A stretch of 64,000 nucleotides of DNA from Blastocystis sp. Blastoise (lineage: Eukaryota > Protista > Bigyra: Opalinata). The notes under the pieces are model-generated. The model was not told the DNA's origin. It searched no databases and saw only the letters and a program-made list of their open reading frames with translations. The DNA lies in contig JBBPEB010000006.1 in NCBI GenBank assembly GCA_039096225.1, positions 1,240,001-1,304,000 of the forward strand, in the 5' to 3' direction. The position numbers and the translations under genes are program-made. The stretch's first letter is position 1, and every line of letters starts with the position of its first letter. This document shows positions 15,293 through 34,091 of the stretch, piece after piece.

Positions 15293-18200
15293 TTACTCTT
15301 TATTTTCATTTTCGTCGATAGTTGAAATAGAAGAAATAGAACCATCTTTCTCTATACCTTCTTTATATTTCTTTATATCATTTTGTAAATGAGGAATAAA
15401 TAGAGGAGGACTATAAGCTTTGTTGTCAAGTTCCTGTTGAATATCAAGATCCGAAGGAATAACAGTTCGACTAATACGATTTATAGGAGATATACTAGTA
15501 TTTCTATTAGAACTTGTTAATAAAGTATTCTTATTTTTTTGTTTCTTTGATTTTTCTTTATGATTTATTTTTTTTGTTTTTTTGTTCATTTTTTCATCAT
15601 TATTAGTTATATTTTCATTATTATGTTTATTATTTTCAATAATATTTTCATTATTATTAGTATGAGACAAAGAAATAGGATATATTAATGGATTAGGAGA
15701 GGATAATGGGTTTTGAGATGAATATCCTGAAGAAGAAATAGAAGAAGTTCGATGTCCAGAATAATAGCCAAAAGAAGAATTTCGATGAGAAGGAGAGACA
15801 AGAGAAGGAGAACCATTTGAACTATATCTATTTGATGAATTATTATTCCATAAAGGAAGAGGAGATTGACTGAAATCTAATCGATAATTATTATTTGTAT
15901 ATATAGGTATATGAGATAATGTATTATTAGAAGAAATAGGAATTTGATTTGATATATTGATTGATGAATCATTCAATAGTTTAGATGGATCTATAGTAGA
16001 TACTATAGGCACAGGTATATTTGAATTATTAAGAATAGGTGAATGACCATTAGTATAAGAATGAATACCTGATCGAGTAGGAGATATAGTTGAATTAGAT
16101 ATAGGATGAGGAGATGAAGAAGAATTATTATTATTATGATTATTTAATATGATTTGAGGAGTAGATAGATTATTATTATTATTTTCTTGATTTATAGATT
16201 GATTATTAATAGAAGATTGAGGAAGAATAACCATAGATTTCACACGATTTGTATTATTATTATTATTCTTATCCTTATTATTAATTTGATTCATTTTTGA
16301 TGCATTTAGAGCATCTATATTAAGAGATCTTCTTGTTAATAATGATTTACGATCTAATATTATAGTATCCTGTAATTCATTATTTTCTTCAGAATTCTTA
16401 GTTATAGTTGATGAATCGATTGGATCATGAGGAGATTTAGAATTATTATTATTGCTATTATCATTTATAATCTTTGAATCTTCTTCTATTGGACTTTTAG
16501 ATCCTTTTTTAACTTTACGAATAATAATTTTCTTTACTTTTTTCTTATTCTTATTATCTTCATTTAAATTATTATTATTATCATCATCTTTTCTATCTTC
16601 AATAGTTTCAGAAACAGGAGAATTACTGTTTTTCTTAACAATCTTCTTTACTATACGTTTCTTAATAATCTTTTTTACTTTACGTTTAGGTTTCTCTTCT
16701 GTTGATTCTATAGGTGTATTTGATTCATTATTCTCATTATTTTCTTTATGAATAATATCAATATTATTTTCATTATTATTAATTATAATATTATTTTTCT
16801 TGGATTTATAAGAATCTAAACTACTATGTTTTGATGAAGAATTCGAATTAGAATTCGATTTTGAATTTGATATAGAAACACTTGAATTCATGGATTGATG
16901 TTTAGAATCTACTATAGGTTCATGAGATATATTTAATATAGACATAGAAGCTCTAAAAGGATGATTCTGTTTTGGTGAAGATAGTATATTCATAGAAGAT
17001 CTCATATTTCTTATTGTAGAAGGATCTATAGTTTTTGATAAAAATTCTCTTCTAGAATTTAAACTAAAAGTATTCTTTGAATTATTTTCTTGCATATCTT
17101 CATTATTATAATTATTATTCTTTCTTTGATTCATATTCAATAGAGTTCCTCCACGTAAGAAATTAGGATTTCCTACAACAGAATCTGCTGTGATTATCAT
17201 CTTTTTATTATTATTATTAGAAAATGAATTATTATGACTATTATTACGACTATTATAAAGATGAGAACTATCTCCACTTCCATCAATATCTAATCCCATA
17301 GATAAATCTTCAGTATCATTACTATATAAATGATATCGATCTCTATCTTGATCTCTAGGATTGATCTTATGATCAAAACCATTACTATTCTTATGATGAT
17401 ATTGTGAATAGGATAAATATAAAGAAGGTCTATGAATAGAATCTTGATCATAAGTACTACAAGTACTACTCGTACGATGGAAATTATTCATTGAATAAGA
17501 TCGAGTTATATTTGCATTATAATATTCATTAAATGATATTGTATGAATACTATGACTAAATAATGAATGTTCTAAATTCATATTCATAGTTGCTTGTAAT
17601 AAAGGTAATAAACGTTCTTTATCATTATTATCTGTTGATTTTAAAATAGGAGATGTAGATCCTATTGTTGATGAAGGAATACTATGAGAATCAACATTAT
17701 TTATATCTATTCCTTCAGGTATATTCATATCTGTATTACTATTAATAGAAGAAGAACGTTCATTATGAATAGAAGAAGAATCACTTGAAGGAAATTGTAA
17801 GGATATATATCCAGGAGAACTAAATGAACGAGTTATTGAATGAGGTTGTAATTGTAATTGTTGTAAATAAGTATAATATAACTATAAAAAGGATTTTTTA
17901 AATAATTTAAAGTAATATAATAATAATAATAATAAACAATAAATATATACCTGTAAAGCTTTTATACGTTTAATTCTTCGTTTAATTTCTTGTTCATTTT
18001 TATTTACTATAATAGATTTTTCTTTCCATATTTCATCTTGTTTCATTTTCTGTTGAGTTTCAAAAGCATATTGATTTTCTGTTAATCGATATTTACCTCG
18101 ATCTCTTAAATCAATACCACTATTGATCCATTCTTGTGTTTCACTATGCCATTGATCTTCAATTCGATCACTTTCTTTTGTTGTCTCTAATTTCACAAAG

Positions 18201-21200
18201 GTCTTATTCATAAAATCCCATCGAAATTTATATCGTAAGAACATAAATAATAAATATCTATAGAAATAGATATATTAAAATATAATAATAATAAATAAAA
18301 AAATAATAAATAAATAAAAAAATATATATAATAATAAAAATAAAAAAACAACTTACAATAAAATAATAAAACAAGGAAGATAAACAAAGCAAATAATCAT
18401 TGTAATTGTATTAATTTGGAAATTTTGATTTGTATATATATAAGGATAAGATCCTTTTGATAATTTGGGTCTTATAATAATACCATAAACACCACTTTCT
18501 TTGATATTACATAGAATCATACTTTTTTCAAATCGATATTGAATTTCATCTAAACATTCAAATTCATTTCGTTTCTCATTTAATTTAGCAATACAATGTT
18601 CATCTTCTGTAATATCTAATGGATGACGATAATAAGTATTATTCTGAAGGACACGAGGTAATAACCATACTTTACGAGGGAACATTAAATCGATCTCTAT
18701 TGCATTGATTAACGATTCTACACGTTTATTATAAATATCTATAAAAGTTAAATTTAATATTAATCCATGTTGAATTACAGGTAAATGTAAAGATAATAAA
18801 GAAGAATCATATCGAGGAGGTTCATATATAGCTATAGGTTTTCCTGAAATAAAACGTAATTCTTGAAGACGTGTATAATTATTAGCTTTATATGTATATT
18901 GATTTAATTGTGAAGATGATAATGTTGTTATGGATAAAAATATTGGTAAATTTGTAGAATGTAATTGAGCTATATAAATAATATATTTTATTCATTAATT
19001 AATTAATATATATATATACCATGAGGTGTATGTATATAACCATAAAAATCATTCGTTTGAGTATATAGAATAATTTGTTTTGATTCTTGACCTAATAAAG
19101 TAATACGATAATCATAAGGAAGTATATCTCTTGGATTTAAATATAAACATTCTGATATAGAATAATGGCAACTACCATCAAAACATCTATAAATGATTTA
19201 TTGTTATTGTTATTATTATAAAATAATTAATATAAATTAAATAAAAATAAATAAAAAAAAATTAAAAAACAACAACCTACCTATACATATTATTTGGACA
19301 ATTATACAATCCTTTACATGATAATGTAGATTCTGTTTCTGAATTGAAAGATATACATGTAGAATCAGGACATCTTAATTGATTCTTCATACATCCATAA
19401 GTAATAGGACATGTTAATCTACAAATACCATCTGAACATAATTGATATGTAGATATAAAACAACTATATGTATTATTATTTGAATATAGAATAGGAATAA
19501 AAATAGATAATGTAGTAGAATCATAATGAATATTAATTTGATTTGATTTTTCTTTAGAATAAATAGAATAATCATAATAATGATAAGGTGAATAAATAGA
19601 TCTTCCTACTTGTTGTCCTGATGGTGATATAAATATAGAATTACAATCGATATTGATATCTACACAAATACCATTAGGACATCTTTTAGGAGATGTAGTA
19701 GGACAAGGAGGAATAGGAGGACAAAGAGAAATATCACGAAAAGATCCATCAGGACATAATGTAATAGATGAAAGAGGAGAAGGAGAAGGAAGAGAAGAAA
19801 ATAATGTTATATTTAATGTTTCACAATAAAGAGGAGAAGATACACATAAATCATTATAACAATGATAAGGAAGATTCTCAGGACAATTTGATAGTAATGG
19901 ACAATCACCTTCATTTAATACACATGTACCTATAAAATATTATTATTATATAATTATTATTATTATATATATACCATCAGGACATTCTACAGGTAAATGT
20001 GAAGGACAAAAAGGAAGTTTTTCTGGATCTTGCTATATATATTATATTATATTATTATATCAATAAAAATAAAAAAATAAAAATAAAATAAAAATAAAAA
20101 TAACATAAACATCACCTACATACATTACAATTTATACATGGTTTACATAAATGATAATGAGCTACACAACTCATATCATCACATAGAAAAGGAATATCTT
20201 TTGGACAAATAGGTCTTTTTGGACAACTTCTATATATAAAACTAATTTCTTGATCTGTTTCTTTTCCTTGTATTAATGTATAATTTTCTATAGAATTATA
20301 AGGATTATCAGATTGATCTTCATTTATAATATTTAAAGATAATAAAATAGGTGAATATCGTTGACCATGTAAAGGAATACAATCTCCAGAAGCACATGCT
20401 TGAGAATGATATATAGAACATCTATTTAATAATAAACATTGTGAAGGATGAGAAACACATTGACCATTTGGACATATATAAGATTGATTAATAGGACAAG
20501 AATATGTATTAGAATTTAGAATAGAAGAACATTCATTTCTTGTAGAAACACAAGTACCATTAGAACATAATATAGGATGAAGAGGAGAACAACCATTAAT
20601 AAATGTACATTCATTAGCATTCCTTACACATTCTCCTCGAATACATTTATAAGGTCTTTCATGAGGACAAGAATGATAGGTATATTCAGTTGTACAATTA
20701 TAAGAATATTTCACACAACGACCTGTTGGACATTTATAAGGAGATGATAATGGACAACCTATATATATTATTATTTTATTATTTATTTATTAATATAATA
20801 TAATATAATAATAAAAAAACATACCATTATCACTAAGACAATCTTCTTCTTTTTCAACACATAATCCATTATATAATCCTGTTTTACACATATAATTATA
20901 AGGAGATGTACATATAGTTCGATCAGTACATAAAGAAGAAGAAGCACGACAACTACCATCAGAACAACGAATATAATTTGTATTATAATTACTTGTATTA
21001 CAAGGCGTAATCAAAGGACAATCTGTATACGATTTCACACATATACCTATAGCACATCGAATTGGTTTATCTTCACTACATAATGAAGGAAGACTAGAAA
21101 AATAAGAATATAAATATTGACGATCTACAAAATAAACTAAAGGAGATTCAAAGAGTTCTGAAGAAAATAAGGATAGCTTATTATTATTATTATTTATTAA

Positions 21201-24200
21201 TGTATGTTCATATTCATTTAATAAAGGAGATTTCTGAAGATTATTTTCTGTAAAGAAAGATTTATCCATATATTTCATAAAAGAATCGATTATTGTATTA
21301 TATAGAGTATTTATTATAGATTTTATATTATTCATTATTTTATTAATATAACTATTATTATTATTTATATCTGTATTCAATAATGAATTAACAAATAAAG
21401 AAGGAGAAGGAGATGTATCTTCAGGAATAAATGAATAAGAAGAATAAGGACAATAAAAAGTAGATATCATACATAAACCATTCTCACATTGTTTATATGG
21501 AGCAACACATAAAGCTAGATAATATTTATTTATTATTATAAATATAAATATTATTATTATAAATATAAATATTATTATTATAAATATAAATATTATTATT
21601 AAATAAAATAATAAAATAAAAAAAAAAAATAAACAAACATACGACTACATTCTTCATCTTCTTTAATACATTCACCATTATAACATGATTTAGGTTTAGA
21701 AGAAGAGCAACCATTCGAAAGAGGACAATCTTCTATAGATTGACGACATGTACCATCTAAACAACGTATATATCCATTAGTATTACAAGTCCAATCACAA
21801 GAAGAATGATAAATATCTATATTATTCTTTGAACTATCTTTTGAATAACATATTAATGTATTATGACACCATCCACTAAATTGATCATTATTACAATTAT
21901 CATTCGATGTACATTCTTCTTTTGAAGATACACATAATCCTGAAATACATTTATAAGGTTTAAACATAGGACATAAAGGTTCAGAACATAAAGAAGAATC
22001 ACGAACACATGTACCATCAGAACATAAATATTTATCATAACTACAAAAACCAGTCACATAATGATCACTTTCCATTGAATATTTATCTAAAAAAGATATT
22101 TATTATATTATAAAAAGATATATATTATAAAATAAAATAAAATAATAAAAAAAAAAAATACAAATAATAAAAAAAAACATACTATAATAACCTTCATATC
22201 CATTAATACAATCACTTCGATCTTTAACATATTCTCCATGAATACTACAGAAACTAGTAAATTTAGTAACTTGTCTTGCTCCAGTAGTAATACATTTTCC
22301 ATTAAGACAATTTGAAGGTACATAAGGAGGTATAGGTGGACAATCATCTTCAGAAACATGACATGATTGATCCCAACATAATATAGGATTTGTAGTTGGA
22401 CAATATAATAATGGACATTTCTTTGTTATAAATACACAACTACCATCATTACATAATTTATAATTAATAGGACAATGAATAGTATTAAGACATTGATTCT
22501 GATGATAATGACATAATCCATCACTACATAAAATAGGTTTATTTCTTGGACATATACGATAAGAAGGACATTGTTCACTTTGAGATATACAACTACCATC
22601 AATACATCGTTTACTACCTTTAGGACAAAGAGGAGGAGGAATAGAATTCGATAAGATATTCGATTGAAAGGATGTATCTGTAGATAATGGATCCCAATAA
22701 TATTTATTTATAGAAGTTAAAGATCCTTCTATAGAAGCAATAGGATCTCCTGTAGGTATAAAATAGGGAGATATACTATATATATAATAACTATCATCAC
22801 TATAATGTATATTATATCTTCTACAAGGATAAAATTGATAATTACGTGAACATAAATGTTGATATCGATCTTTTATTTTATTTATACAATTATTTATATC
22901 TTCTTTATTATTATATATATTACATACATCGATATACATTTCTAAATATTTACTAACACATTGTTCTATTGTATGTTTTATATTTAAATCTGATTTATCA
23001 TGATATTCTGTTATATCTAAATATTCTTCATTATATTCTTGTAAAGAATTATAGATATAAGGGAATATATTCGTAACACCATAAGTACTATCTTCAATCA
23101 TATAACAACCTCCATCTTCACATCTCATTTCATTATCTCTACATACAGATATAGTAGGACATAAATAAGAATGTTCTACACATATTTTTTGATAATCACA
23201 CATATAGAATCCTAATGGACAATGATAATTAGATTCATCAGTACATAATGAATAAGAAGATACACAATAACCAGTATCACATAATATAGGACTCGTAGTA
23301 GGACAAATAACAGGACTTGAACATAATAAACTATTTCGTACACATGTTTTACTAGAAGAACAATAATATGGATAAGCAGAAGGACAATGAGAAGTTAATA
23401 ATATTGAAGAAGAAGGAATAGTTATATTTGTAGTTGTATCTAAAGATTTATTTTATTATAGTTTATTGTTTATTATTATTATTATTATAATATATATAAT
23501 ATATACTTCCTTGTTGATTTCTTTCAATAAAATGAATTTGTGAATAACAATCTTTAGTATTTTCAACACAAGTACCATTATCACAAAGAATAGGTTTTTC
23601 AAAAGTACATAAGATACTAGGTCTACATTGTTGATAGAATAAAGCACATCCTCCATTAGGACAATTTATATAAGGAGATCGACAAAGAGGTGTTTGAGAA
23701 CAATAAAAAGATGAAGGTTTACATGTATTATCAGGACATAATACAAGAGGAGAAGGACATGTAAATTTATTAAAGAAAATAAATAAATATATAAATATAA
23801 ATATAAATAAATATTATAAATATATAAAGGATATGAAACATGTGTTGGACATTCAAGCATAGAAACAACACAAGTATTATCATTACATTTATAAAAGTTT
23901 TTTGGACAATTTGTATAGATATTAATGATTGTAGATTCATTTAAAGATTTTTCATAAATAATATTATTATAAGCATCTTTATGATAGAGAGGATAAGGAA
24001 ATAAAGTAGTTTCTTCATTATTATTATTATTAATAGTTTTAATAGAAGAAATAGTTTGAATATTATTATTAAGAATAGAAGAAGATGAATATAAATTCAT
24101 ATTTTTTGATCTTGTAGTAGGTGCACTTTCAGATAAATTTAAATATAAGAATTTATTATCATATTGATAATTATAAGTTTCACCAAAAATAAATATAGAA

Positions 24201-27200
24201 TCCGAAATACACTGATTTGAAGGAGATAAATGATAATATCTTGGACATGTAATTGAAGAAGGACATAAAGTAGCATTCTTAACACAATATCCTTGAGGAC
24301 ATCGATAAGGATAGGTTAATGGACATGTTGTATATATACATTCAGATATACTATAATTATAATTATTATTATTATTATTATAATATAATATAATATATAT
24401 ATACTTATGTGTACACATTCCATCAGGACATAAAATAAGTGGTTTAGGACAAAAACGAAGAGAAGGACATTCAATTGGATCAATAACACAACTTTTCTAT
24501 TTATATATATATATTTATTAATATAATAATAATAATAATAAAAAAATACTTTATCCCAACATAAAATAGGAGCATAAGAAGGACATTGAATAGAGTTTTT
24601 ATATTGATTACATTCTTCTATAGATACTGCACAAGTAACTAGATCTCCACAAGTAATTGTAGAAGGTGGACAATGAACTTGTTGAGGACACATTTGCTTA
24701 TTTATAGCTATTGTTCCATCAACACATATTACTTTATTTGTATCATGTATAGGAAAAGAAGGACATCTAAAAATATATTATATTATATTATATTAATTAT
24801 AAAAATAAAATCAGTCTATATACTTCATATAATTATCAACACAAGCTCCATTTTCACATATATATCCATGACAAGTACAATTATGAATATCTTGTTGACA
24901 ACCTATATGAATATCTTCAGATTCACGATTCATACAAGCTTCCATTCCTAGAGGACAAGTAAGACTATTATGACAATCATTCCAATCAGAAACACAATGA
25001 ATAGTTTGTCCATTATCAACGAATTCTATAGGATTCTTTATGTAATCACCATTCATATTATTATAACACATATAAGGACTAAGAGAAGAATGTTGTTTAC
25101 ATAAAGAAGGAAGGAAAACAAGATTTGGTTGAGTACCTAATAATATCTTTGTATAGATTTCTGTATTTGTAAGATCATCCCAAGTAATATCTGTTAAATA
25201 AAAATCTATAGATCCATAACCATATAAAGGAGATAATATAGTTAAACTATGTATATAAGGAGTCTGAGATTTGAAAGGAATAGTCAATCGAAGCTATATA
25301 GAGAGATATTTATATATATAATTATTAAATATATATAAAAACATACAGATCTTTGTTTTCCACTTGAATCAAGAGTAATAATAGCAAATAGAGTTTTATT
25401 AGATGTATTAATATCTAATAAATTCCCTAATGCATCACGAATCTTAATAATCATAGTCACATCTGTATATAGAGAAGTACTCTCTGAAATAAATGATATA
25501 TATGTATTTGTATATTCAGGTTCTAATGGAGAAAGAGAAGTAAGTATATTAAGAAATAGTATAGAAATATATTTTTATAATTATATTATATATAATATAA
25601 AGGATATAGATAATGATATTGAAGATATTGATGATTATTAATAATAGGATAATATATATAATCGCCAGAATAGATTAATTTGTATTCACACGTATAGGAA
25701 TCCTTTATAAATATACAAGGGAATAGTTCAGTATGAAGAATAGGATTTCCATCACCCTCTATATCCAGTGATACATCCATTTCAATAGAAATAGAATAGG
25801 CATCAAATTCTATTGGACGTTCATATATATCATAAAGATATACATATATAGAACAAGTTGAATTCACACGTTCACATTCATCATTCTTAAGGACTATATT
25901 TATATTCATTTATTTATATAGATTAATAAGAATAATACTTGTAGATTGATATCTGATTTGTGCCGGATAGAGTTGAATCTTTAATAATGGAAAAGGAGAA
26001 GTTGAATTATAATATAATTGAAGTGTATATTCAGTTAGTATATTCATTAAAGAAAATAATTTTTTATTTTTTAAATAAATATTTATAAATAAATATAGGA
26101 TATAATTTCCAGGATGAGTAGAAGTTAAATCATTATAGATTATTAAATATTGACCTATATATAAATATTATATTTTATTATATTATTATATATATACCAA
26201 GTTCTTTATCATATAATTGAACAGTCAAATGAGGTGGAATAAACATTGTATTCGACTATATAGAATAATAATAATAATAATAATAATAATATATATATAA
26301 ATATACAGAAGATGTAATAGCCATAGAGAATAGATTTGTGTCAAAATAGGTATATACAGGATTCCCATATATATCTACAGTAGATAATAAGAATGATCCT
26401 TTTGTCTATTAATATATAATATAATATATAAATATATACATTTTCTCTTAATCCATGTATACTACATAATTCATCAGGTAACTTATTTTCATTCTCTAAG
26501 GGAGAACAGGAATATATATAGGAAGTAGCTTCTGATGGTTTTATAATAGCTTGTATTGGAGAATTCTATTCATATATATATAGAATATAATAATATAATA
26601 AATATACTAATAAAGCTATTCCAGATCGTTTTACATATATATCATAGTTTCCAATTGTATATAAATATAACGAAAATACATATACATTTCCATAAATTAA
26701 TATTGCATAACTATATAGATATATAATAAAATAATAAAAATATATATACCTATCTGTTTCTATACGAGTTTCATTCTTATATATTTCTATATATAATTCT
26801 TTTGATATATCTTCTTCTATTGTATTATTAAAGGAGTGATTATTAAGAAAATATTTATATAATAATATATAATACTATAATGTAAAAGATATATCAAAGA
26901 GATGAACATGAATGAAAATTTGATTACCAGCTATATAAGCTATATATATAAATAATAATTATAATAAATATATATATATACTTTTATTAATTCCTTCATC
27001 ATCTAATAATTCTATATATATAATAAAAATACATATAATAAATACCATTTTTTCCATAATCTTCATAATTAGGAACAGGAATAGGATTATTATTCGAAGG
27101 GAAATGAATAAATGATTGTTGAGGGTCCATAATTGATGGAGAAATAATCAATTGAAATTGTTGTTCATAATGAACTTGTTCAAGAGAAAATGTTATAGTA

Positions 27201-30200
27201 TATGTATCAGCATCAATATAATACATTCTATATAATATAATAATAATAATAATAATACATACATACTTTGTATAAATAGTATCATGATCAAAAATAAAGA
27301 TAGCTGGTTTATTCCCTGTACAATAAGGTAAATCACATACATTGAGATTATTACCCTTAGAATCAATCACTTTATAATAATAATAGTAATAATAAAAATA
27401 AATAAATATATATACATGTTGATTTTAAGAATGGTTGAATATAAGTAGGATTAATATCATTACCATAAATATCTCGTGGATGAAATGTACAATTGAATTC
27501 TATTCCTGTAGTTAATTCATCAGGACAAAGTAAATAAGAAGGAGATCCAAGAAGATCTATATAATAATATTATTATTATATATTATATATATATATACTC
27601 ATATTAGGATAAGCATAAGTAGTAGTAGTAAGTATTTCTATATAGGGTTTATCTTCAAAGGATGTAGAAATAGTAATAGTATATAGATCTCGATAAGAAG
27701 AAAGATGAAGAGGAGAATCTATTAGAAACTATATAAATATTATAAATTATATATGATTATATATATACATGAATATGATTATTATTGAGAGTATAAGAAT
27801 AGAGAAGAGGAGGAGAAGAAGTTAAATTGAATTGTTGATTTATAGGAATAGGACTATATAATAATAAATAGTATATAAAAACAATATACATTTCATTATT
27901 ATGAATATCTTTAACAATAACATCTAATTCTCTTCTTATTTCAGGTACAAATCCCATACTGAATGTTCCTGAATAGGTTGATGATAAAGAATACTTTAAG
28001 CATGTGAATGTAGTAATTGTCACTGATGTATCCAATATAGGCATATTATTATATAATAATATAAACGTATAATTACGAGCAGTAGGAAGATGAGGTATAG
28101 TTGTATATAGATTAAAGAAAATAATAGTATTTAATTATTATTATTAATATATATATATTTTTAAAAGGATATTTATAAGTACCAGGTGATGTAGTTTCAA
28201 CTATATACATGATTCCATCATAATAATCTTCATCTATATTTATCCTATATAAATATATATTTATATAATAATAATAGAATACCATTTAAGATTAGATTGT
28301 TGACTCGTAATAATATGTTGATTTTCATCAAATATTTGAAATGAAAAGAATGGATCAGTTTCTAAATTGACATTTAATATCGATGATACATGAAATTTAA
28401 GAGGAGATGTTAATCTATAAATATATATAAAATAATTAAAAATTATAATAATAATATACATGAATAGAGAATAAGGAAGAGAAGATAGAGTAACAGGAAT
28501 ATCTTTAGAGAATAGATTATCTTGTTTATTTTGAAAGAATAGACGTATATATAAATAAGGATATTCTGATTCAGTAAGACCAATAATAGAAGACATTTCA
28601 ACAATATAATGAATATGAATACTATAAATAAAGAATAAATAATAAATAATAATATTAAATATACGTATTATTGAGTATATGTTTATCTACAGTAAAAGGA
28701 GTATCTTCTAAAGTATCAGCTCGTCGAATATCTATATCAATATATTCTCCTTCATGATTATATATAGAAAAAGAAGGATCTTCTTTTGAATATCCACCTT
28801 CTTCAATATAATATGTAGCATTCAATGAATTAAAATATTCATCCTATTATAAATATATAATAATAATAATAATTAATAAATACTTTTAAATTCATATAGA
28901 TATCTCCACAAATAGAAATATTAGTAGAATCACAATAAGAAACAAATTCAATTCCAGTCCCATGAATATCAGTATGAACAATATAAAGAGTACCAGGAAC
29001 AACAGCTATTATAGATATTATATATATTATATAAATAAAAATATATTTACTTAGATAAGAATCATAGATATTTCCAGAAACTAATGTAATCAATGAAATC
29101 TTATGGAATCCTGATACTTTAGCAGGTATAGAACATGTACTAAGAAGACTTATTGAATCTGGATTCATAACATCATAATAAGTATTTCGATCTATATAAA
29201 ATTATATTCAAATTATATATATATAGATTTATATATATACCTTCTACATAACTATAATCACATATTTTATACACACTTTGTAAATTAATTACTGAATTAT
29301 TATATCTATAAATTATATATATATGAATAAAAAGAATAATAATTAATTACATATCAAAGAATTTGATGTTTATAGGAATAATATCACCAGCAGTATAAAG
29401 AGAATCATGAGTTACTTTTATTGTAGATATACTATATATATATATAAGAGAATAATAAAATAAATAATATACATTTCAGTAGAAGGTATAGTAGTGATAT
29501 TCCATTCTAAAGAGGACCAAATATTATCTTCAGATAAACAATCTATTTTCACAGTTATATTTCTAACTTTTGAAGGTAATTGAATAAATGTATAAAGAGG
29601 ACAAATAGAAGTATATTGATATTCTTGTGTATATATATCAAGAGAAGGAGATGTTGAAAATGAATAAAAGGATTTCTGAGTATACTATATAATAATAATA
29701 TATTATAATATAAATATATAAATATACATCTCCATCACCTTTAATATACACTTTATATTTATCTCTTCGATTATCTAAACAATATCCATCATCATATATA
29801 TCTCTTGTATATATATACATATACGTTAATGTACCTGCAAAACTAATAGGACTGTAAAAAGTAGAATTAAGAAAAATATATAATATTATTATTGAGAGAA
29901 TATAATATAAAAATATAATATAATAATAAAAGGATATATAGATTTCAGTTTTCGAGCAATCATTAGGACTAATTCTACTTTGAATAGTACAATATATATA
30001 AGAATTAATCTTATCAATATCTTCTTCTTCTTTATTGAGAAGACGTACATATAAATGACCATTAGAAATCTCACGAAAGAAACGAATGGATAATGTATAT
30101 TGTGAAGTAGAATCCATAGTGATTCTATAACTAAAGAATTGATCGGATTCCCCTGGAAATAAAGGAATATCAAATCCTTCTGAAGATGTTACATATAATT

Positions 30201-30268
30201 TTATTATAAAATTATTCTGATTCACTAAATTATAATAACGATCTCTTACTATTAATGTAAACTATATA

Positions 30269-30305
<37 letters not shown>

Positions 30306-33300
30306 CAACACTTCTATATAAAGGAATAATTGAATAGATAGTAGAGATAGAAGAGTAGAGATAAGAAGGAACATCACTATATACTGATAATTGGAATGGC
30401 GTATTAATCACAGATAAACCATTCACACTATAGAAAATAGTATTATTATTATTTATATAAATATTTATATATATATACATCCATCTAAAATAAACAGATT
30501 CTGAAGTATAAGAAACAAATTGATATATTAATTTTTCATGTAATGGATCTATATAATAATAAATAATAATAAATATATAAATACCTTCTTTTGAAGTAAA
30601 GAAATAAGATTGATCTGTATTTAATAGAATTGTTCCTGTAAATAATGTTGTAGGAACTGTATTATTATATTCATCACGAAAATATATTTCAAAATCATCT
30701 ATATATATATGTTATTATTAAATAAATATAAAATAAATATATACGAATAATACCAACAATAGTAGTTTTATTTGGTGGTATAAAAATAGTATTTGAAGGA
30801 AGAAGAGAACCATGAGTTACTGTCCATGCAGATAAGAATGGAGAATAATGAATAGGAATACCATCTACTGTTATATAAATATCATATATAGCTACATAGA
30901 TAGCTTTTAAATATAAATAAAGAGAAGAAGAAGAAAGATAGGAGAAGGTATATGTAGGAAGAGATGGAACTATATATATATATAGAATAATAATAATAAA
31001 TAAATAAAATAAATACCCTTTCGATCACTAATAAAAGTGACTTTAATTCGTTGTTCGAGATCAATATCTATAGGTATTTGTCCACATCGACTATTAAGGA
31101 ATAATTGAAGTGGATATATAGATCCTGCAGTACTCGTGAAGAAGAGAGGATATTCAGAAGGAGTAATAGTAGTAGAAGTCAAAGGAATCGTTGATACTGT
31201 AGGAGATATCAATTGGATACCCTATTCAATATAATTATATTATTATTATTAATATATACATTTTCTGGTGAAATAATTTCTAAATAATATCCTGATGATA
31301 AATGAGAGACAGAATCCTATAAATATAATAATAATAATAATATATAGAATGATACAAGATTGATATTGAGAGTATGTTTATTAGAGAGATAGAGATGAAG
31401 TTGATTATATCTAGAGATCAATTGTAGAGTTAATTGTCTATTATTATAGAAGGAATAGGATACTGAAGTGATTATAGAAGGAGATTTAATGGTAGGAGGA
31501 GTATCACCAGGTAAATATACTTGAAGAACTATATATTTATTAATATTATTAATTATTATATTTATATACTATTTTCATTAAAGAAGAATATATAAGAATT
31601 AGTTTGAGAGAAACATCGAGATTGAAGTATATTATTATAAGGAATATCAGGGTTTATTACAGGAGTAGAAGAAGAGTATTGTATATAAGGATGAAGAAGA
31701 ATACAAAATGGAGATATGGATTCTATATATATATAATATATATTTAGTATATATATACCTAAATAGATATTTGATTTAAATTGAAGTATTTCATACATAT
31801 AAATATGATATCCAAATATTGATGTTTTATTAAGAGATACAGTCTAAATATATATATAAAAATAATAAATATATAAATATACTTGTTGTTGAATAAGAAT
31901 ATTTTTGAAATCTCTTGTACAATAATAAGGATTTTCTCCTTCACTGTTTAAAGTACTACTATAACTATTTCCAGAGAGATTAATACTATTATTCATATTC
32001 GGTATAGTTGTAGTATCTTCTTTATCAATAATCATAGAAACTACTTTAGAGAGAAGAGGAGCATCACAGAGAAATGTCAAATTCGTTTGAGTTATAAAAC
32101 GAGATATAGAATCTATAGAATAATATTATTTTATTTTTATTATTATTATGTATACTTGATTGAGTTCCACATGTTCTAGAAGCAAAGAATATAGATATAG
32201 AATAGGTGATTCCAGGAATAAGACCTAATTTATCTGCATAATTCGTTATATTAATATGAGAACCAACTGGAGTATTATAACTATATATAATAATAATAAT
32301 ATATAATATATAATATATATATATATACCCTCCATAATCTAAGAATAAATGTTTATTAATAAAAACCCATAATCCATTATTGGTTTCAAAATCTATAAAT
32401 TGATCTGTTCTATTCTCATATCTATATATATAATAAATAATATTATATAAATATAAAATAATAATATACAAGAAGAATAGATTTGTTTTCATAGTAAACC
32501 AGCATTTCTTACCAATATATTCTTCTATTGGACTTAATGCATATCCTCCTTTTACATCTGTTAAAGGAAAATAAGTAGGACTAGAAGATATAAAATATAT
32601 ATAAAATATATATATACTAGTTAAGAGTAAGAAGGTTTTTGGTACCCATAATACCAATAAGAGGAAAAGAGAAAGAATAAGAATTATTACTTTCTGTAAA
32701 CCATGTATTGAATGTAGAATATGTAGAATTCATAGATGTACTATAAAAAAGAAGAATAATAAAAAAATATAATATATATATACACAGGAAGATCATAATC
32801 ATTGAGTTCTGATTCCACGAATCCAGTTTCTTTAGAACTTCCCCATTTCTGAAAGTCAGTATTCCCTTGGGGATCTAAACAGCATAATCGAGAAATCACT
32901 TCATTATTATGGAAATCATCAGTAATATCCTCTACGAAACAACATCCATCTCCTGCAGCAGTATAATCATAATAGGTACTCATTGTATATATTATAGCTA
33001 TATAGAATTATATTCATTATATATATATATATATATATACGAGAAATAGCAACAAAAATTCGAATATTATTATCAGCATAATCATTCACTTTATCACATA
33101 CTGTTTCTACTCTATCTTCTTTTGAATATAAATTTGAATATATATATCTATACTTATAATATAATAGAATAAATATAATATATAATATACTTTGGATAAT
33201 TTGAAGGTTGTTTTGTAATAAAATTATCTGTATAATGAATAATACAATCACGAATACCAAATCCTTTTTCATCAACATATAATGCATATACTCTATATAA

Positions 33301-34091
33301 ATAAATAATAATAATTATAATTATATATATACTTATAAGTGACTGATTTTGTTTGTATTTCAATATATTCACCTCCAGGAAGTGATTGACAAGAATCATA
33401 AGGCCATTGATTTGTTATGAATTCATTAAATGTAGAATACTTTTGAAAAGTCATTATGAAATATTCATCATCAGACCAACCATTTATATTCAATATTAAC
33501 AACTTTAACGAGGTTCCTGGCAATAACGAAATAGGAAGGGAACCTATAGAAATATATTTAATTTATAATTAATTTTTATAGATAAATATGATGAGTATAA
33601 TCATAAATTTCATATTTATAGAAATAAAATAAATTATAAAAATCATACCAATTACGTCGTAATCTCTGAATGAATTATTCTCTATGTTCTTAAATCCTGT
33701 AGGATCCGATATATGTTCTATATAACTTCGTTTATCTGTTATAGAGTCATTATTGGTATTCGAATAAAACATTTCCCACATTTGACCTTGAAAATGATAA
33801 CAATAAGTCTAAATAAATTTATAAATGATTCTAGAATTCTATTCATATATCATTACATACAAGATAAACTTCATTACGATCTTTTCCTATCCAAACATAC
33901 TCAGAATCAAAATAATAATCACCTCCTTGTTTTATCATACAATCTTGTACAGGCAATTCTCTTGATTTACCTATTCAATTATGTGGAATATTATGGAATT
34001 AAGAGAATAGAAAAAAATTACCTAATTTCTTTTCAGAATTCACTGCTAAACATGTAGTATAGATGAATAAGAGTAGATAAAATATTCTCAT
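15293..34091 (-). CDS. Giant multi-exon type I surface protein: signal peptide, fibro-slime/PA14 domain, Ig/filamin-like repeats, many CPxxxPxxCxDGxC repeats, TM helix, >800-aa low-complexity cytoplasmic tail
   Basis: ATG at 34091 (MRIFYLLLFIYTTCLA). PA14/fibro-slime motif YFPL..WFTMKT..FETNNGLWVFINKHLFLDYGG..LGLIPGITYSISIFFASR at 32150-32580. AG...D..xN repeats at ~25300-31500; Cys repeats at 19150-25100; TM TMIICFVYLPCFIIL at ~18360. Exons splice in phase into the 811-aa terminal ORF. Roughly 60 exons. Confidence 0.85.
23761..23834 (-). other. U12-type AT-AC intron 1 (74 nt)
   Basis: 5' ATATCCTTT, branch TTTTCTTTAAT, 3' AC. Removal gives ECPTHVS-CPSPLVLCPDNTC and restores the Cys repeat. 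Confidence 0.92.
25540..25607 (-). other. U12-type AT-AC intron 2 (68 nt)
   Basis: 5' ATATCCTTT, branch TTTCTTAAT, 3' ...CTTAC. Removal gives QYHYL-SLSPLEPEYT in frame. Confidence 0.9.
26038..26103 (-). other. U12-type AT-AC intron 3 (66 nt)
   Basis: 5' ATATCCTAT, branch TTTTCTTTAAT, 3' ATAC. Removal gives THPGNL-TEYTLQLYY. Confidence 0.88.
26836..26892 (-). other. U12-type AT-AC intron 4 (57 nt)
   Basis: 5' ATATCTTTT, branch TTTTCTTAAT, 3' TCAC. It contains an in-frame TAG. Removal gives AGNQIFIHVHLFD-SFNN, the repeat's D.xN motif. Confidence 0.85.
28103..28172 (-). other. U12-type AT-AC intron 5 (70 nt)
   Basis: 5' ATATCCTTT, branch TTTTCTTTAAT, 3' ATAC. Removal gives SPGTYK-TIPHLPTARNY. 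Confidence 0.9.
29854..29937 (-). other. U12-type AT-AC intron 6 (84 nt)
   Basis: 5' ATATCCTTT, branch TTTTTCTTAAT, 3' TTTAC. Removal gives CSKTEIY-SPISFAG. The intron is in frame and stop-free but has intron-like composition. Confidence 0.82.

What the first reader, a model, noticed from the sequence alone, without database searches (positions are those of the whole stretch)
23761..29937. Six U12-type AT-AC minor introns clustered in 6.2 kb of one lineage-specific surface-protein gene
Seen: six 57-84 nt introns start ATATCC/ATATCT, carry a TTTCTT(T)AAT branch site and end in AC. Each removal gives an in-frame join, and in two cases restores a recognisable repeat motif (HVS-CPSP, LFD-SFNN). 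Established: RTATCCTT, TTCCTTAAC and AC define minor-spliceosome introns. These are normally rare, about one per gene, mostly GT-AG, and found in ancient conserved genes; large-scale gain is known from few lineages such as Physarum polycephalum. Inference: about a tenth of the introns of this repeat-built gene are AT-AC, in mixed phases (2,2,1,0,2,0) and apparently non-equivalent repeat positions. That suggests recent de novo minor-intron creation, or a minor-spliceosome throttle on a surface antigen. Standard GT-AG gene predictors would fragment this gene.
Basis: partly seen in the sequence, partly recalled or inferred. Interest (0 to 1): 0.9.

Follow-up and report, generated by a model that had tools for sequence, protein, structure and literature searches.

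The report
Old minor-intron cluster in Blastocystis gene
A giant, multi-copy membrane-protein gene of a tortoise gut protist (Blastocystis) carries six real rare-type (U12, AT-AC) introns, far more than a gene usually has, but at least three are shared with distant human-gut relatives, so the cluster is old rather than newly created.

Summary
Observation confirmed: six AT-AC introns on the minus strand, with the stated coordinates and phases. They lie in a 60-intron, ~5,156-aa fibro-slime/filamin-Ig/Cys-repeat membrane-protein gene of tortoise Blastocystis (probably Rus-B/"Blastoise"). U11 and U6atac pass Rfam cut-offs; U12 is full-length below cut-off; U4atac is weak. Across 5-14 gene copies, five introns keep their ends while varying in length out of frame. 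'Recent de novo gain in a lineage-specific gene' is mostly wrong. Introns at 29937, 26892 and 26103 have U12 counterparts at the same position and phase in human-type orthologues (~24% identity), including the RNA-curated ST1 model. The protein family also occurs in rhizarians, a ciliate and Rhodelphis. The other three are absent from the orthologues, but so are ~70% of the gene's ordinary introns, so loss versus gain is unresolved. The positions are not repeat-equivalent. Minor introns and their AT-AC bias are known in Blastocystis; six in one gene (~10% versus ~1% in ST1) is unusual. No RNA reads could be laid. The scan flagged paralogous copies before.

The parts
15293..34091 (-). Host gene, ~5,156 aa, 60 modelled introns (54 GT-AG, 6 AT-AC): putative signal peptide, fibro-slime/PA14-like region, filamin/Ig-like repeats, Cys-rich repeats, one TM helix (~aa 4178-4196), long low-complexity tail. 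Some GT-AG boundaries in the 5' third are uncertain.
   Evidence: Gene model; public Blastoise models 88-99% identical; domains inferred from homologues
29854..29937 (-). U12 AT-AC intron A, 84 nt, phase 0; ancestral to Blastocystis
   Evidence: Same position and phase, AT-AC, in L035, L036, L040 and ST1 AV274_0648; paralogue lengths 75/77/80/84; exactly spliced in public model WA158_004419
28103..28172 (-). U12 AT-AC intron B, 70 nt, phase 2; seen only in the tortoise lineage
   Evidence: Retention gives frameshift and stop; 14 copies of 65/66/68/70 nt with fixed ends; absent from four human-type orthologues
26836..26892 (-). U12 AT-AC intron C, 57 nt, phase 0, ATATCTT donor; splits the D-x-F-x-N motif of a filamin-like repeat; ancestral to Blastocystis
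   Evidence: In-frame stop if retained; 13 copies of 57-65 nt; same site AT-AG in ST1 and L036, AT-AC in L040, absent in L035
26038..26103 (-). U12 AT-AC intron D, 66 nt, phase 1; ancestral to Blastocystis
   Evidence: Stop-free if retained, but same site and phase is AT-AG in the curated ST1 model and L036; in L040 an AT-AC intron of ~165 nt, read by eye.
25540..25607 (-). U12 AT-AC intron E, 68 nt, phase 2; seen only in the tortoise lineage
   Evidence: Frameshift and stops if retained; copies of 65/68/70/72 nt; absent from human-type orthologues
23761..23834 (-). U12 AT-AC intron F, 74 nt, phase 2, inside a Cys repeat; seen only in the tortoise lineage
   Evidence: Frameshift if retained; removal restores the repeat spacing seen in all aligned homologues; copies of 68/74/78/81 nt; lies in a half of the gene that is intron-free in human-type orthologues

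Best explanation
All six are genuine minor-spliceosome introns. U11/U12 read the ATATC(C/T)T donor and a branch site that pairs with the U12 snRNA through one G-U wobble, and the intron is cut at AC (pairing shown on sequence; splicing inferred). The cluster is old. A, C and D were present before tortoise and human-type Blastocystis split (shown). B, E and F most likely belonged to the same ancestral cluster and were lost in human-type lineages together with most ordinary introns of this gene (inferred). Recent duplication of the whole gene (six full-length copies and several partial ones, 93-97% identical) then multiplied the cluster to at least 50 U12 introns genome-wide (shown). No regulatory role is needed to explain the pattern.
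For: Minor snRNAs: U11 62.9 bits, U6atac 63.8, U12 46.8 full-length, U4atac 29.7 weak. All six branch sites pair 8-9 of 9 with this genome's U12. Paralogue introns have fixed ends and out-of-frame length changes. The RNA-curated ST1 model splices U12 introns at A, C and D (PMC5608401). Human-type lineages hold different subsets, as loss would give (L035 lacks C and D; among them only L040 has the intron at 27415). Only 12 exact (15-16 with near matches) of 53 GT-AG positions are shared, against 3 of 6 U12. The Cys-rich half has no introns in human types but 12 GT-AG plus F here. U12 enrichment holds in the shared set (ST1 3 of 23, P=0.0014) and the unshared set (3 of ~40, P=0.007, background 1%), so one old origin explains both.
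Against: No outgroup settles B, E and F. Two rhizarian homologues show no shared U12 position, and Amorphochlora shares 0 of 59 positions (mapped to aa 2773 of 3853), so they are uninformative. Massive intron gain in the AT-rich tortoise lineage would give the same presence/absence pattern. No RNA reads from this organism were seen.
Confidence: 0.6

Rival explanations
1. Two-step gain: A, C and D are ancestral, while B, E and F were created de novo in the tortoise lineage, perhaps by spread of a resident U12 intron to new sites of the same transcript (reverse splicing followed by reverse transcription).
For: B, E and F are absent from four human-type orthologues. B and F share a long identical branch region. 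Other U12 introns sampled in this genome are mostly phase 0 (11 of 16 candidates, a few of them doubtful), the signature Larue and Roy took as a hint of gain in ST1 (PMC10639083). Unchecked scan notes report U12 introns in bacterial-type genes.
Against: About 70% of the GT-AG introns are also missing from those orthologues. Three independent U12 gains among ~40 unshared introns is unlikely at background rate (P about 0.007) unless gain is locally biased. Intron interiors are low-complexity AT, so shared ancestry cannot be shown.
Confidence: 0.3
2. The cluster is kept by selection as a minor-spliceosome throttle on the expression of a multi-copy surface protein.
For: Three positions have persisted across a deep split while most GT-AG introns were lost; the gene is amplified.
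Against: No expression data. L035 has lost two of the three. The literature finds U12 excision not meaningfully slower (PMC7367187), and in Physarum it is as efficient as U2 (10.1101/2020.10.12.336362).
Confidence: 0.1
3. Exon or repeat duplication copied one U12 intron six times.
For: Five of the six lie in the filamin/Ig-like repeat region.
Against: On a repeat profile they fall at column 29 phase 0 (A, mapped through orthologues), 48 phase 0 (C), 85 phase 2 (B) and 93-94 phase 1 (D). E did not map and has a different context; F is in a different repeat type.
Confidence: 0.02
4. They are chance motifs in AT-rich DNA, or are spliced as GT-AG introns.
For: A and D are stop-free multiples of three; the public annotation reads through or avoids them in nearly all copies.
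Against: Five contain no GT or AG at all; shuffles give 0.02 per gene; ends are conserved in paralogues and orthologues; with B forbidden the model found no GT-AG path.
Confidence: 0.02

Closest known systems
Blastocystis ST1 U12-type introns (Gentekaki 2017, PMC5608401; Larue and Roy 2023, PMC10639083)
   Same: Same genus, AT-AC bias, short introns, four minor snRNAs; the ST1 orthologue AV274_0648 carries three of these very introns.
   Different: ST1 has 346 in 319 genes (about one per gene). Here there are six in one gene, longer (57-84 nt), all AT-AC where ST1 has AT-AG at C and D, and multiplied by gene duplication.
Non-random clustering of U12 introns in genes (Moyer 2020, PMC7367187)
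   Same: More minor introns per gene than a binomial expectation (P about 3e-5 for 6 of 60 at 1%).
   Different: Known minor-intron genes usually have one or two (PMC6865273); six is an extreme case.
Physarum polycephalum minor-intron expansion (10.1101/2020.10.12.336362)
   Same: Locally high U12 density and a relaxed branch site.
   Different: No genome-wide explosion here: a strict pattern gives 92 hits against 23 for a swapped-order control, about a third of them in this family. I saw no transposon-like inverted ends on the six introns.
Fibro-slime/PA14 + filamin-Ig (PF00630, PF23616) + Cys-repeat giant membrane proteins of protists
   Same: Same domain order and size as homologues in Lotharella, Bigelowiella, Amorphochlora, Rhodelphis and metagenomes.
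   Different: The tortoise copy is divergent (no Pfam domain called on single exons), has an ~860-aa low-complexity tail and is amplified. The family's function is not established here.

Membership tests
U12-type (minor) intron | 5' splice site RTATCCT | tested here: met
   Five ATATCCT, one ATATCTT
U12-type (minor) intron | Extended branch site near the 3' end, complementary to U12 snRNA | tested here: met
   8-14 nt from the end; pairs with this genome's U12 with one G-U wobble
U12-type (minor) intron | AC or AG 3' terminus giving an in-frame join | tested here: met
   joins agree with orthologue alignments
U12-type (minor) intron | Minor snRNAs U11, U12, U6atac in the genome | tested here: met
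   U11 and U6atac over cut-off; U12 full-length, E 6e-7, under cut-off
U12-type (minor) intron | U4atac snRNA in the genome | tested here: inconclusive
   Full-length candidate, 29.7 bits, E 0.045; one control genome also rings
U12-type (minor) intron | Spliced at these junctions in RNA of this organism | tested here: inconclusive
Indirect only: one public paralogue model splices A exactly; the curated ST1 model splices A, C and D
U12-type (minor) intron | Splicing depends on the minor spliceosome | not testable with these tools
   Needs knock-down or inhibition
Recently gained (lineage-specific) intron | Absent at the homologous position in orthologues: introns A, C, D | tested here: not met
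   Present in human-type orthologues
Recently gained (lineage-specific) intron | Absent in orthologues and in an informative outgroup: introns B, E, F | tested here: inconclusive
   Absent in four orthologues that lack most introns; rhizarian homologues share no positions
Introns copied by repeat duplication | Same repeat position and phase | tested here: not met
Lineage-specific (orphan) gene | No homologues outside the lineage | tested here: not met

The most novel reading that the evidence does not exclude
Blastocystis is a second lineage, after Physarum, that creates minor introns de novo, and gain is biased towards genes that already carry one: A, C and D arose on the Blastocystis stem and B, E and F later in the tortoise branch. 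This gene would then be a dated, within-gene record of U12 intron spread.
Probability: 0.3. Interest if true: 0.72.

Novelty: new variant of a known kind. Interest (0 to 1): 0.42.

Why it matters
Why minor introns cluster in some genes, and whether they are ever gained, are open questions; Larue and Roy asked for exactly this comparison inside Blastocystis. This gene gives six non-equivalent sites with a partial history (three shared, an AT-AC/AT-AG difference at two sites, two lineage losses) and 5-14 paralogous copies per site, so one outgroup genome would decide gain versus loss. Practically, the public annotation breaks this whole gene family at the AT-AC introns and hides a ~5,100-aa membrane protein present in six full copies.

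Tried and rejected
The spliced model was never sent to a search tool: remote searches used single exons by reference or protein ids, and the joined-protein search was left out; the joined model was used only in local scripts. The tool's backwards-pattern control is inflated (it reads as a common TATAG acceptor on the other strand), so a swapped-order control was used. Pfam called no domain on single exons (one weak, unrelated hit). Cercozoa M6MM (30 introns) and Amorphochlora (76 mapped) homologues have no U12 introns at these positions. A search with the ST1 protein found no stramenopile outgroup. Rejected: repeat duplication, chance motif, orphan gene, Physarum-scale genome-wide expansion, recent origin of all six.

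Full report
Organism. The window is G000:C14:1240001-1304000 of a 33.34-Mb, 34-contig genome; the window is about 21% GC. This fits the tortoise Blastocystis isolate Rus-B (33.3 Mb, 33 scaffolds, 23.1% GC; PMC10690189 Table 1). Near-identical proteins are deposited as 'Blastocystis sp. Blastoise'. The identification is an inference.

Observation. A self-trained gene model of the minus strand gives one open reading frame from 34091 to 15293, with 60 introns and about 5,156 aa. Six introns are AT-AC: A 29937-29854, B 28172-28103, C 26892-26836, D 26103-26038, E 25607-25540, F 23834-23761, in phases 0, 2, 0, 1, 2, 2. They are longer than the GT-AG introns (57-84 nt against a median of 45). A U12 pattern finds only these six in the whole window; local shuffles give 0.02 on average. 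Retention breaks the frame or adds a stop for B, C, E and F; A and D would read through. Five of the six contain no GT or AG.

Machinery. U11 (62.9 bits) and U6atac (63.8) pass Rfam cut-offs, U12 is full-length at 46.8 bits (E 6e-7), and U4atac is a weak full-length candidate. Both branch-site variants pair with the branch-binding stretch of this U12 through a single G-U wobble. Minor introns and the minor spliceosome are already known in Blastocystis: 346 in 319 genes in ST1 (PMC5608401), 77% AT-AC and 49% phase 0 (PMC10639083).

Paralogues. The gene has six full-length copies (C14, C13, C30, C31, C26, C8) and several partial ones at 93-97% identity. In them the introns keep donor, branch site and AC but change length out of frame: A 75/77/80/84, B 65/66/68/70 (14 copies), C 57-65 (13 copies), E 65/68/70/72, F 68/74/78/81. 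This is how introns behave, not coding DNA. The family holds at least 50 U12 introns. With a strict pattern the genome gives 92 hits (about 86 distinct) against 23 for a swapped-order control, and 28 belong to this family. My rough extrapolation is a few hundred AT-AC introns genome-wide, similar to ST1; I could not count them properly. Public Blastoise models break or read through at these introns; one paralogue model (WA158_004419) joins A exactly.

Age. Orthologues from four human-type Blastocystis were modelled or mapped: L035, L036 and L040 (metagenome contigs, subtypes not verified) and the RNA-curated ST1 gene AV274_0648 (L043). They are 24-26% identical to the tortoise protein. Intron A is AT-AC at the same position and phase in all four. 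C is AT-AG in ST1 and L036, AT-AC in L040 and missing in L035. D is AT-AG in ST1 and L036, apparently a ~165-nt AT-AC intron in L040 (read by eye) and missing in L035. So at least three of the six predate the tortoise/human-type split, and ST1 itself has 3 U12 introns among 23. B, E and F are absent from all four. But only 12 exact (15-16 with near matches) of 53 GT-AG positions are shared, and the Cys-rich half, with 12 GT-AG introns and F here, is a single 5.4-6.1-kb reading frame in human types. Loss or gain therefore cannot be decided for B, E and F. I favour ancestry plus loss, because the excess of U12 introns appears in both the shared and the unshared set and the human-type lineages hold different subsets. 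Two rhizarian homologues carry no U12 intron at these sites, and Amorphochlora shares none of 59 positions, so nothing dates the cluster beyond Blastocystis.

Repeat positions. On a profile of the filamin/Ig-like repeat built from non-Blastocystis homologues, A, C, B and D map to columns 29, 48, 85 and 93-94 with phases 0, 0, 2 and 1. E did not map and has a different context, and F is in a Cys repeat. Repeat duplication is rejected.

The gene. It is not lineage-specific. An exon search gave 149 relatives at E<1e-10, many of 3,700-4,600 aa, from Rhodelphis, a ciliate, chlorarachniophytes, a cercozoan and metagenomes, named 'fibro-slime domain-containing' and carrying Filamin, Ig_GEX2_N and PA14 hits. 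The model has a putative signal peptide, a fibro-slime-like region (aa 306-491 matches such a protein at E 2e-8), Ig-like repeats, Cys repeats, one TM helix near aa 4178 and a long tail. A surface location is inferred; 'antigen' is untested.

Mechanism: shown and inferred. Shown: signals, snRNA complementarity, frame logic, paralogue behaviour, conservation of three sites, gene amplification. Inferred: splicing by the minor spliceosome in this isolate, ancestry of B, E and F, and absence of a regulatory role. Clustering of U12 introns is a known general tendency (PMC7367187), usually one or two per gene (PMC6865273); six of 60 has P about 3e-5 at the ST1 background of 1%.

Limits. Genome fetching was closed. 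The joined protein was not searched; exons were searched by reference, and the joined model stayed in local scripts. Some GT-AG boundaries of my model are uncertain, which affects the shared-intron counts by a few.

Verdict. Real and unusual in count, but an extreme, at least partly ancestral case of a known feature of Blastocystis; it is not evidence by itself of recent minor-intron creation. Interest 0.42; 0.72 if an outgroup shows B, E and F to be gains (probability 0.3).

Noticed in passing
L002:1501-1617 (-), U6atac: The 5'-splice-site-binding box reads GCCGAGA instead of the consensus AAGGAGA. From my own knowledge of the human pairing, this removes the pair with intron position +6, which may explain the many ATATCT donors in this genome.
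   Followed up: partly
G000 C8, C13, C14, C26, C30, C31 and others: The 19-kb gene is present in six full-length copies at 95-97%; the C26 copy has a ~2-kb insertion. One partial block (from about window 31220 down) recurs at six loci, and window ~33330-32150 recurs at over a dozen more.
   Followed up: partly
L036:8688 and 9329; L043:8095 and 8736: AT-AG U12 introns in ST1 and a relative at sites that are AT-AC in the tortoise isolate and in L040: terminal-dinucleotide switching at conserved positions.
   Followed up: partly
L008-L034: Other U12 AT-AC candidates sit in ordinary genes recognised by eye (RAD51/DMC1-like, KDEL receptor, zinc transporter, glycogen phosphorylase, glycerol-3-phosphate dehydrogenase, NAGLU-like, ISWI-like), mostly in phase 0.
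   Followed up: partly
L005-L007, L010, L016-L018, L031: A dispersed ~57-nt repeated sequence matches the loose U12 pattern at many loci; probably a repeat-family false positive.
   Followed up: no
G000:C16:655071-655139: A U12-like candidate with a doubled donor-plus-branch unit, as if tandemly duplicated inside itself.
   Followed up: no
window 35966 and 38106: Identical ~48-nt CpG-rich inverted ends flank a 2.1-kb non-coding stretch upstream of the gene (also noted by the scan).
   Followed up: no
L035, L036, L040, L043: In human-type Blastocystis the orthologue lies next to a radical SAM gene upstream (all four); downstream lies a FYVE-domain gene (Pfam in L043, by eye in L035).
   Followed up: no
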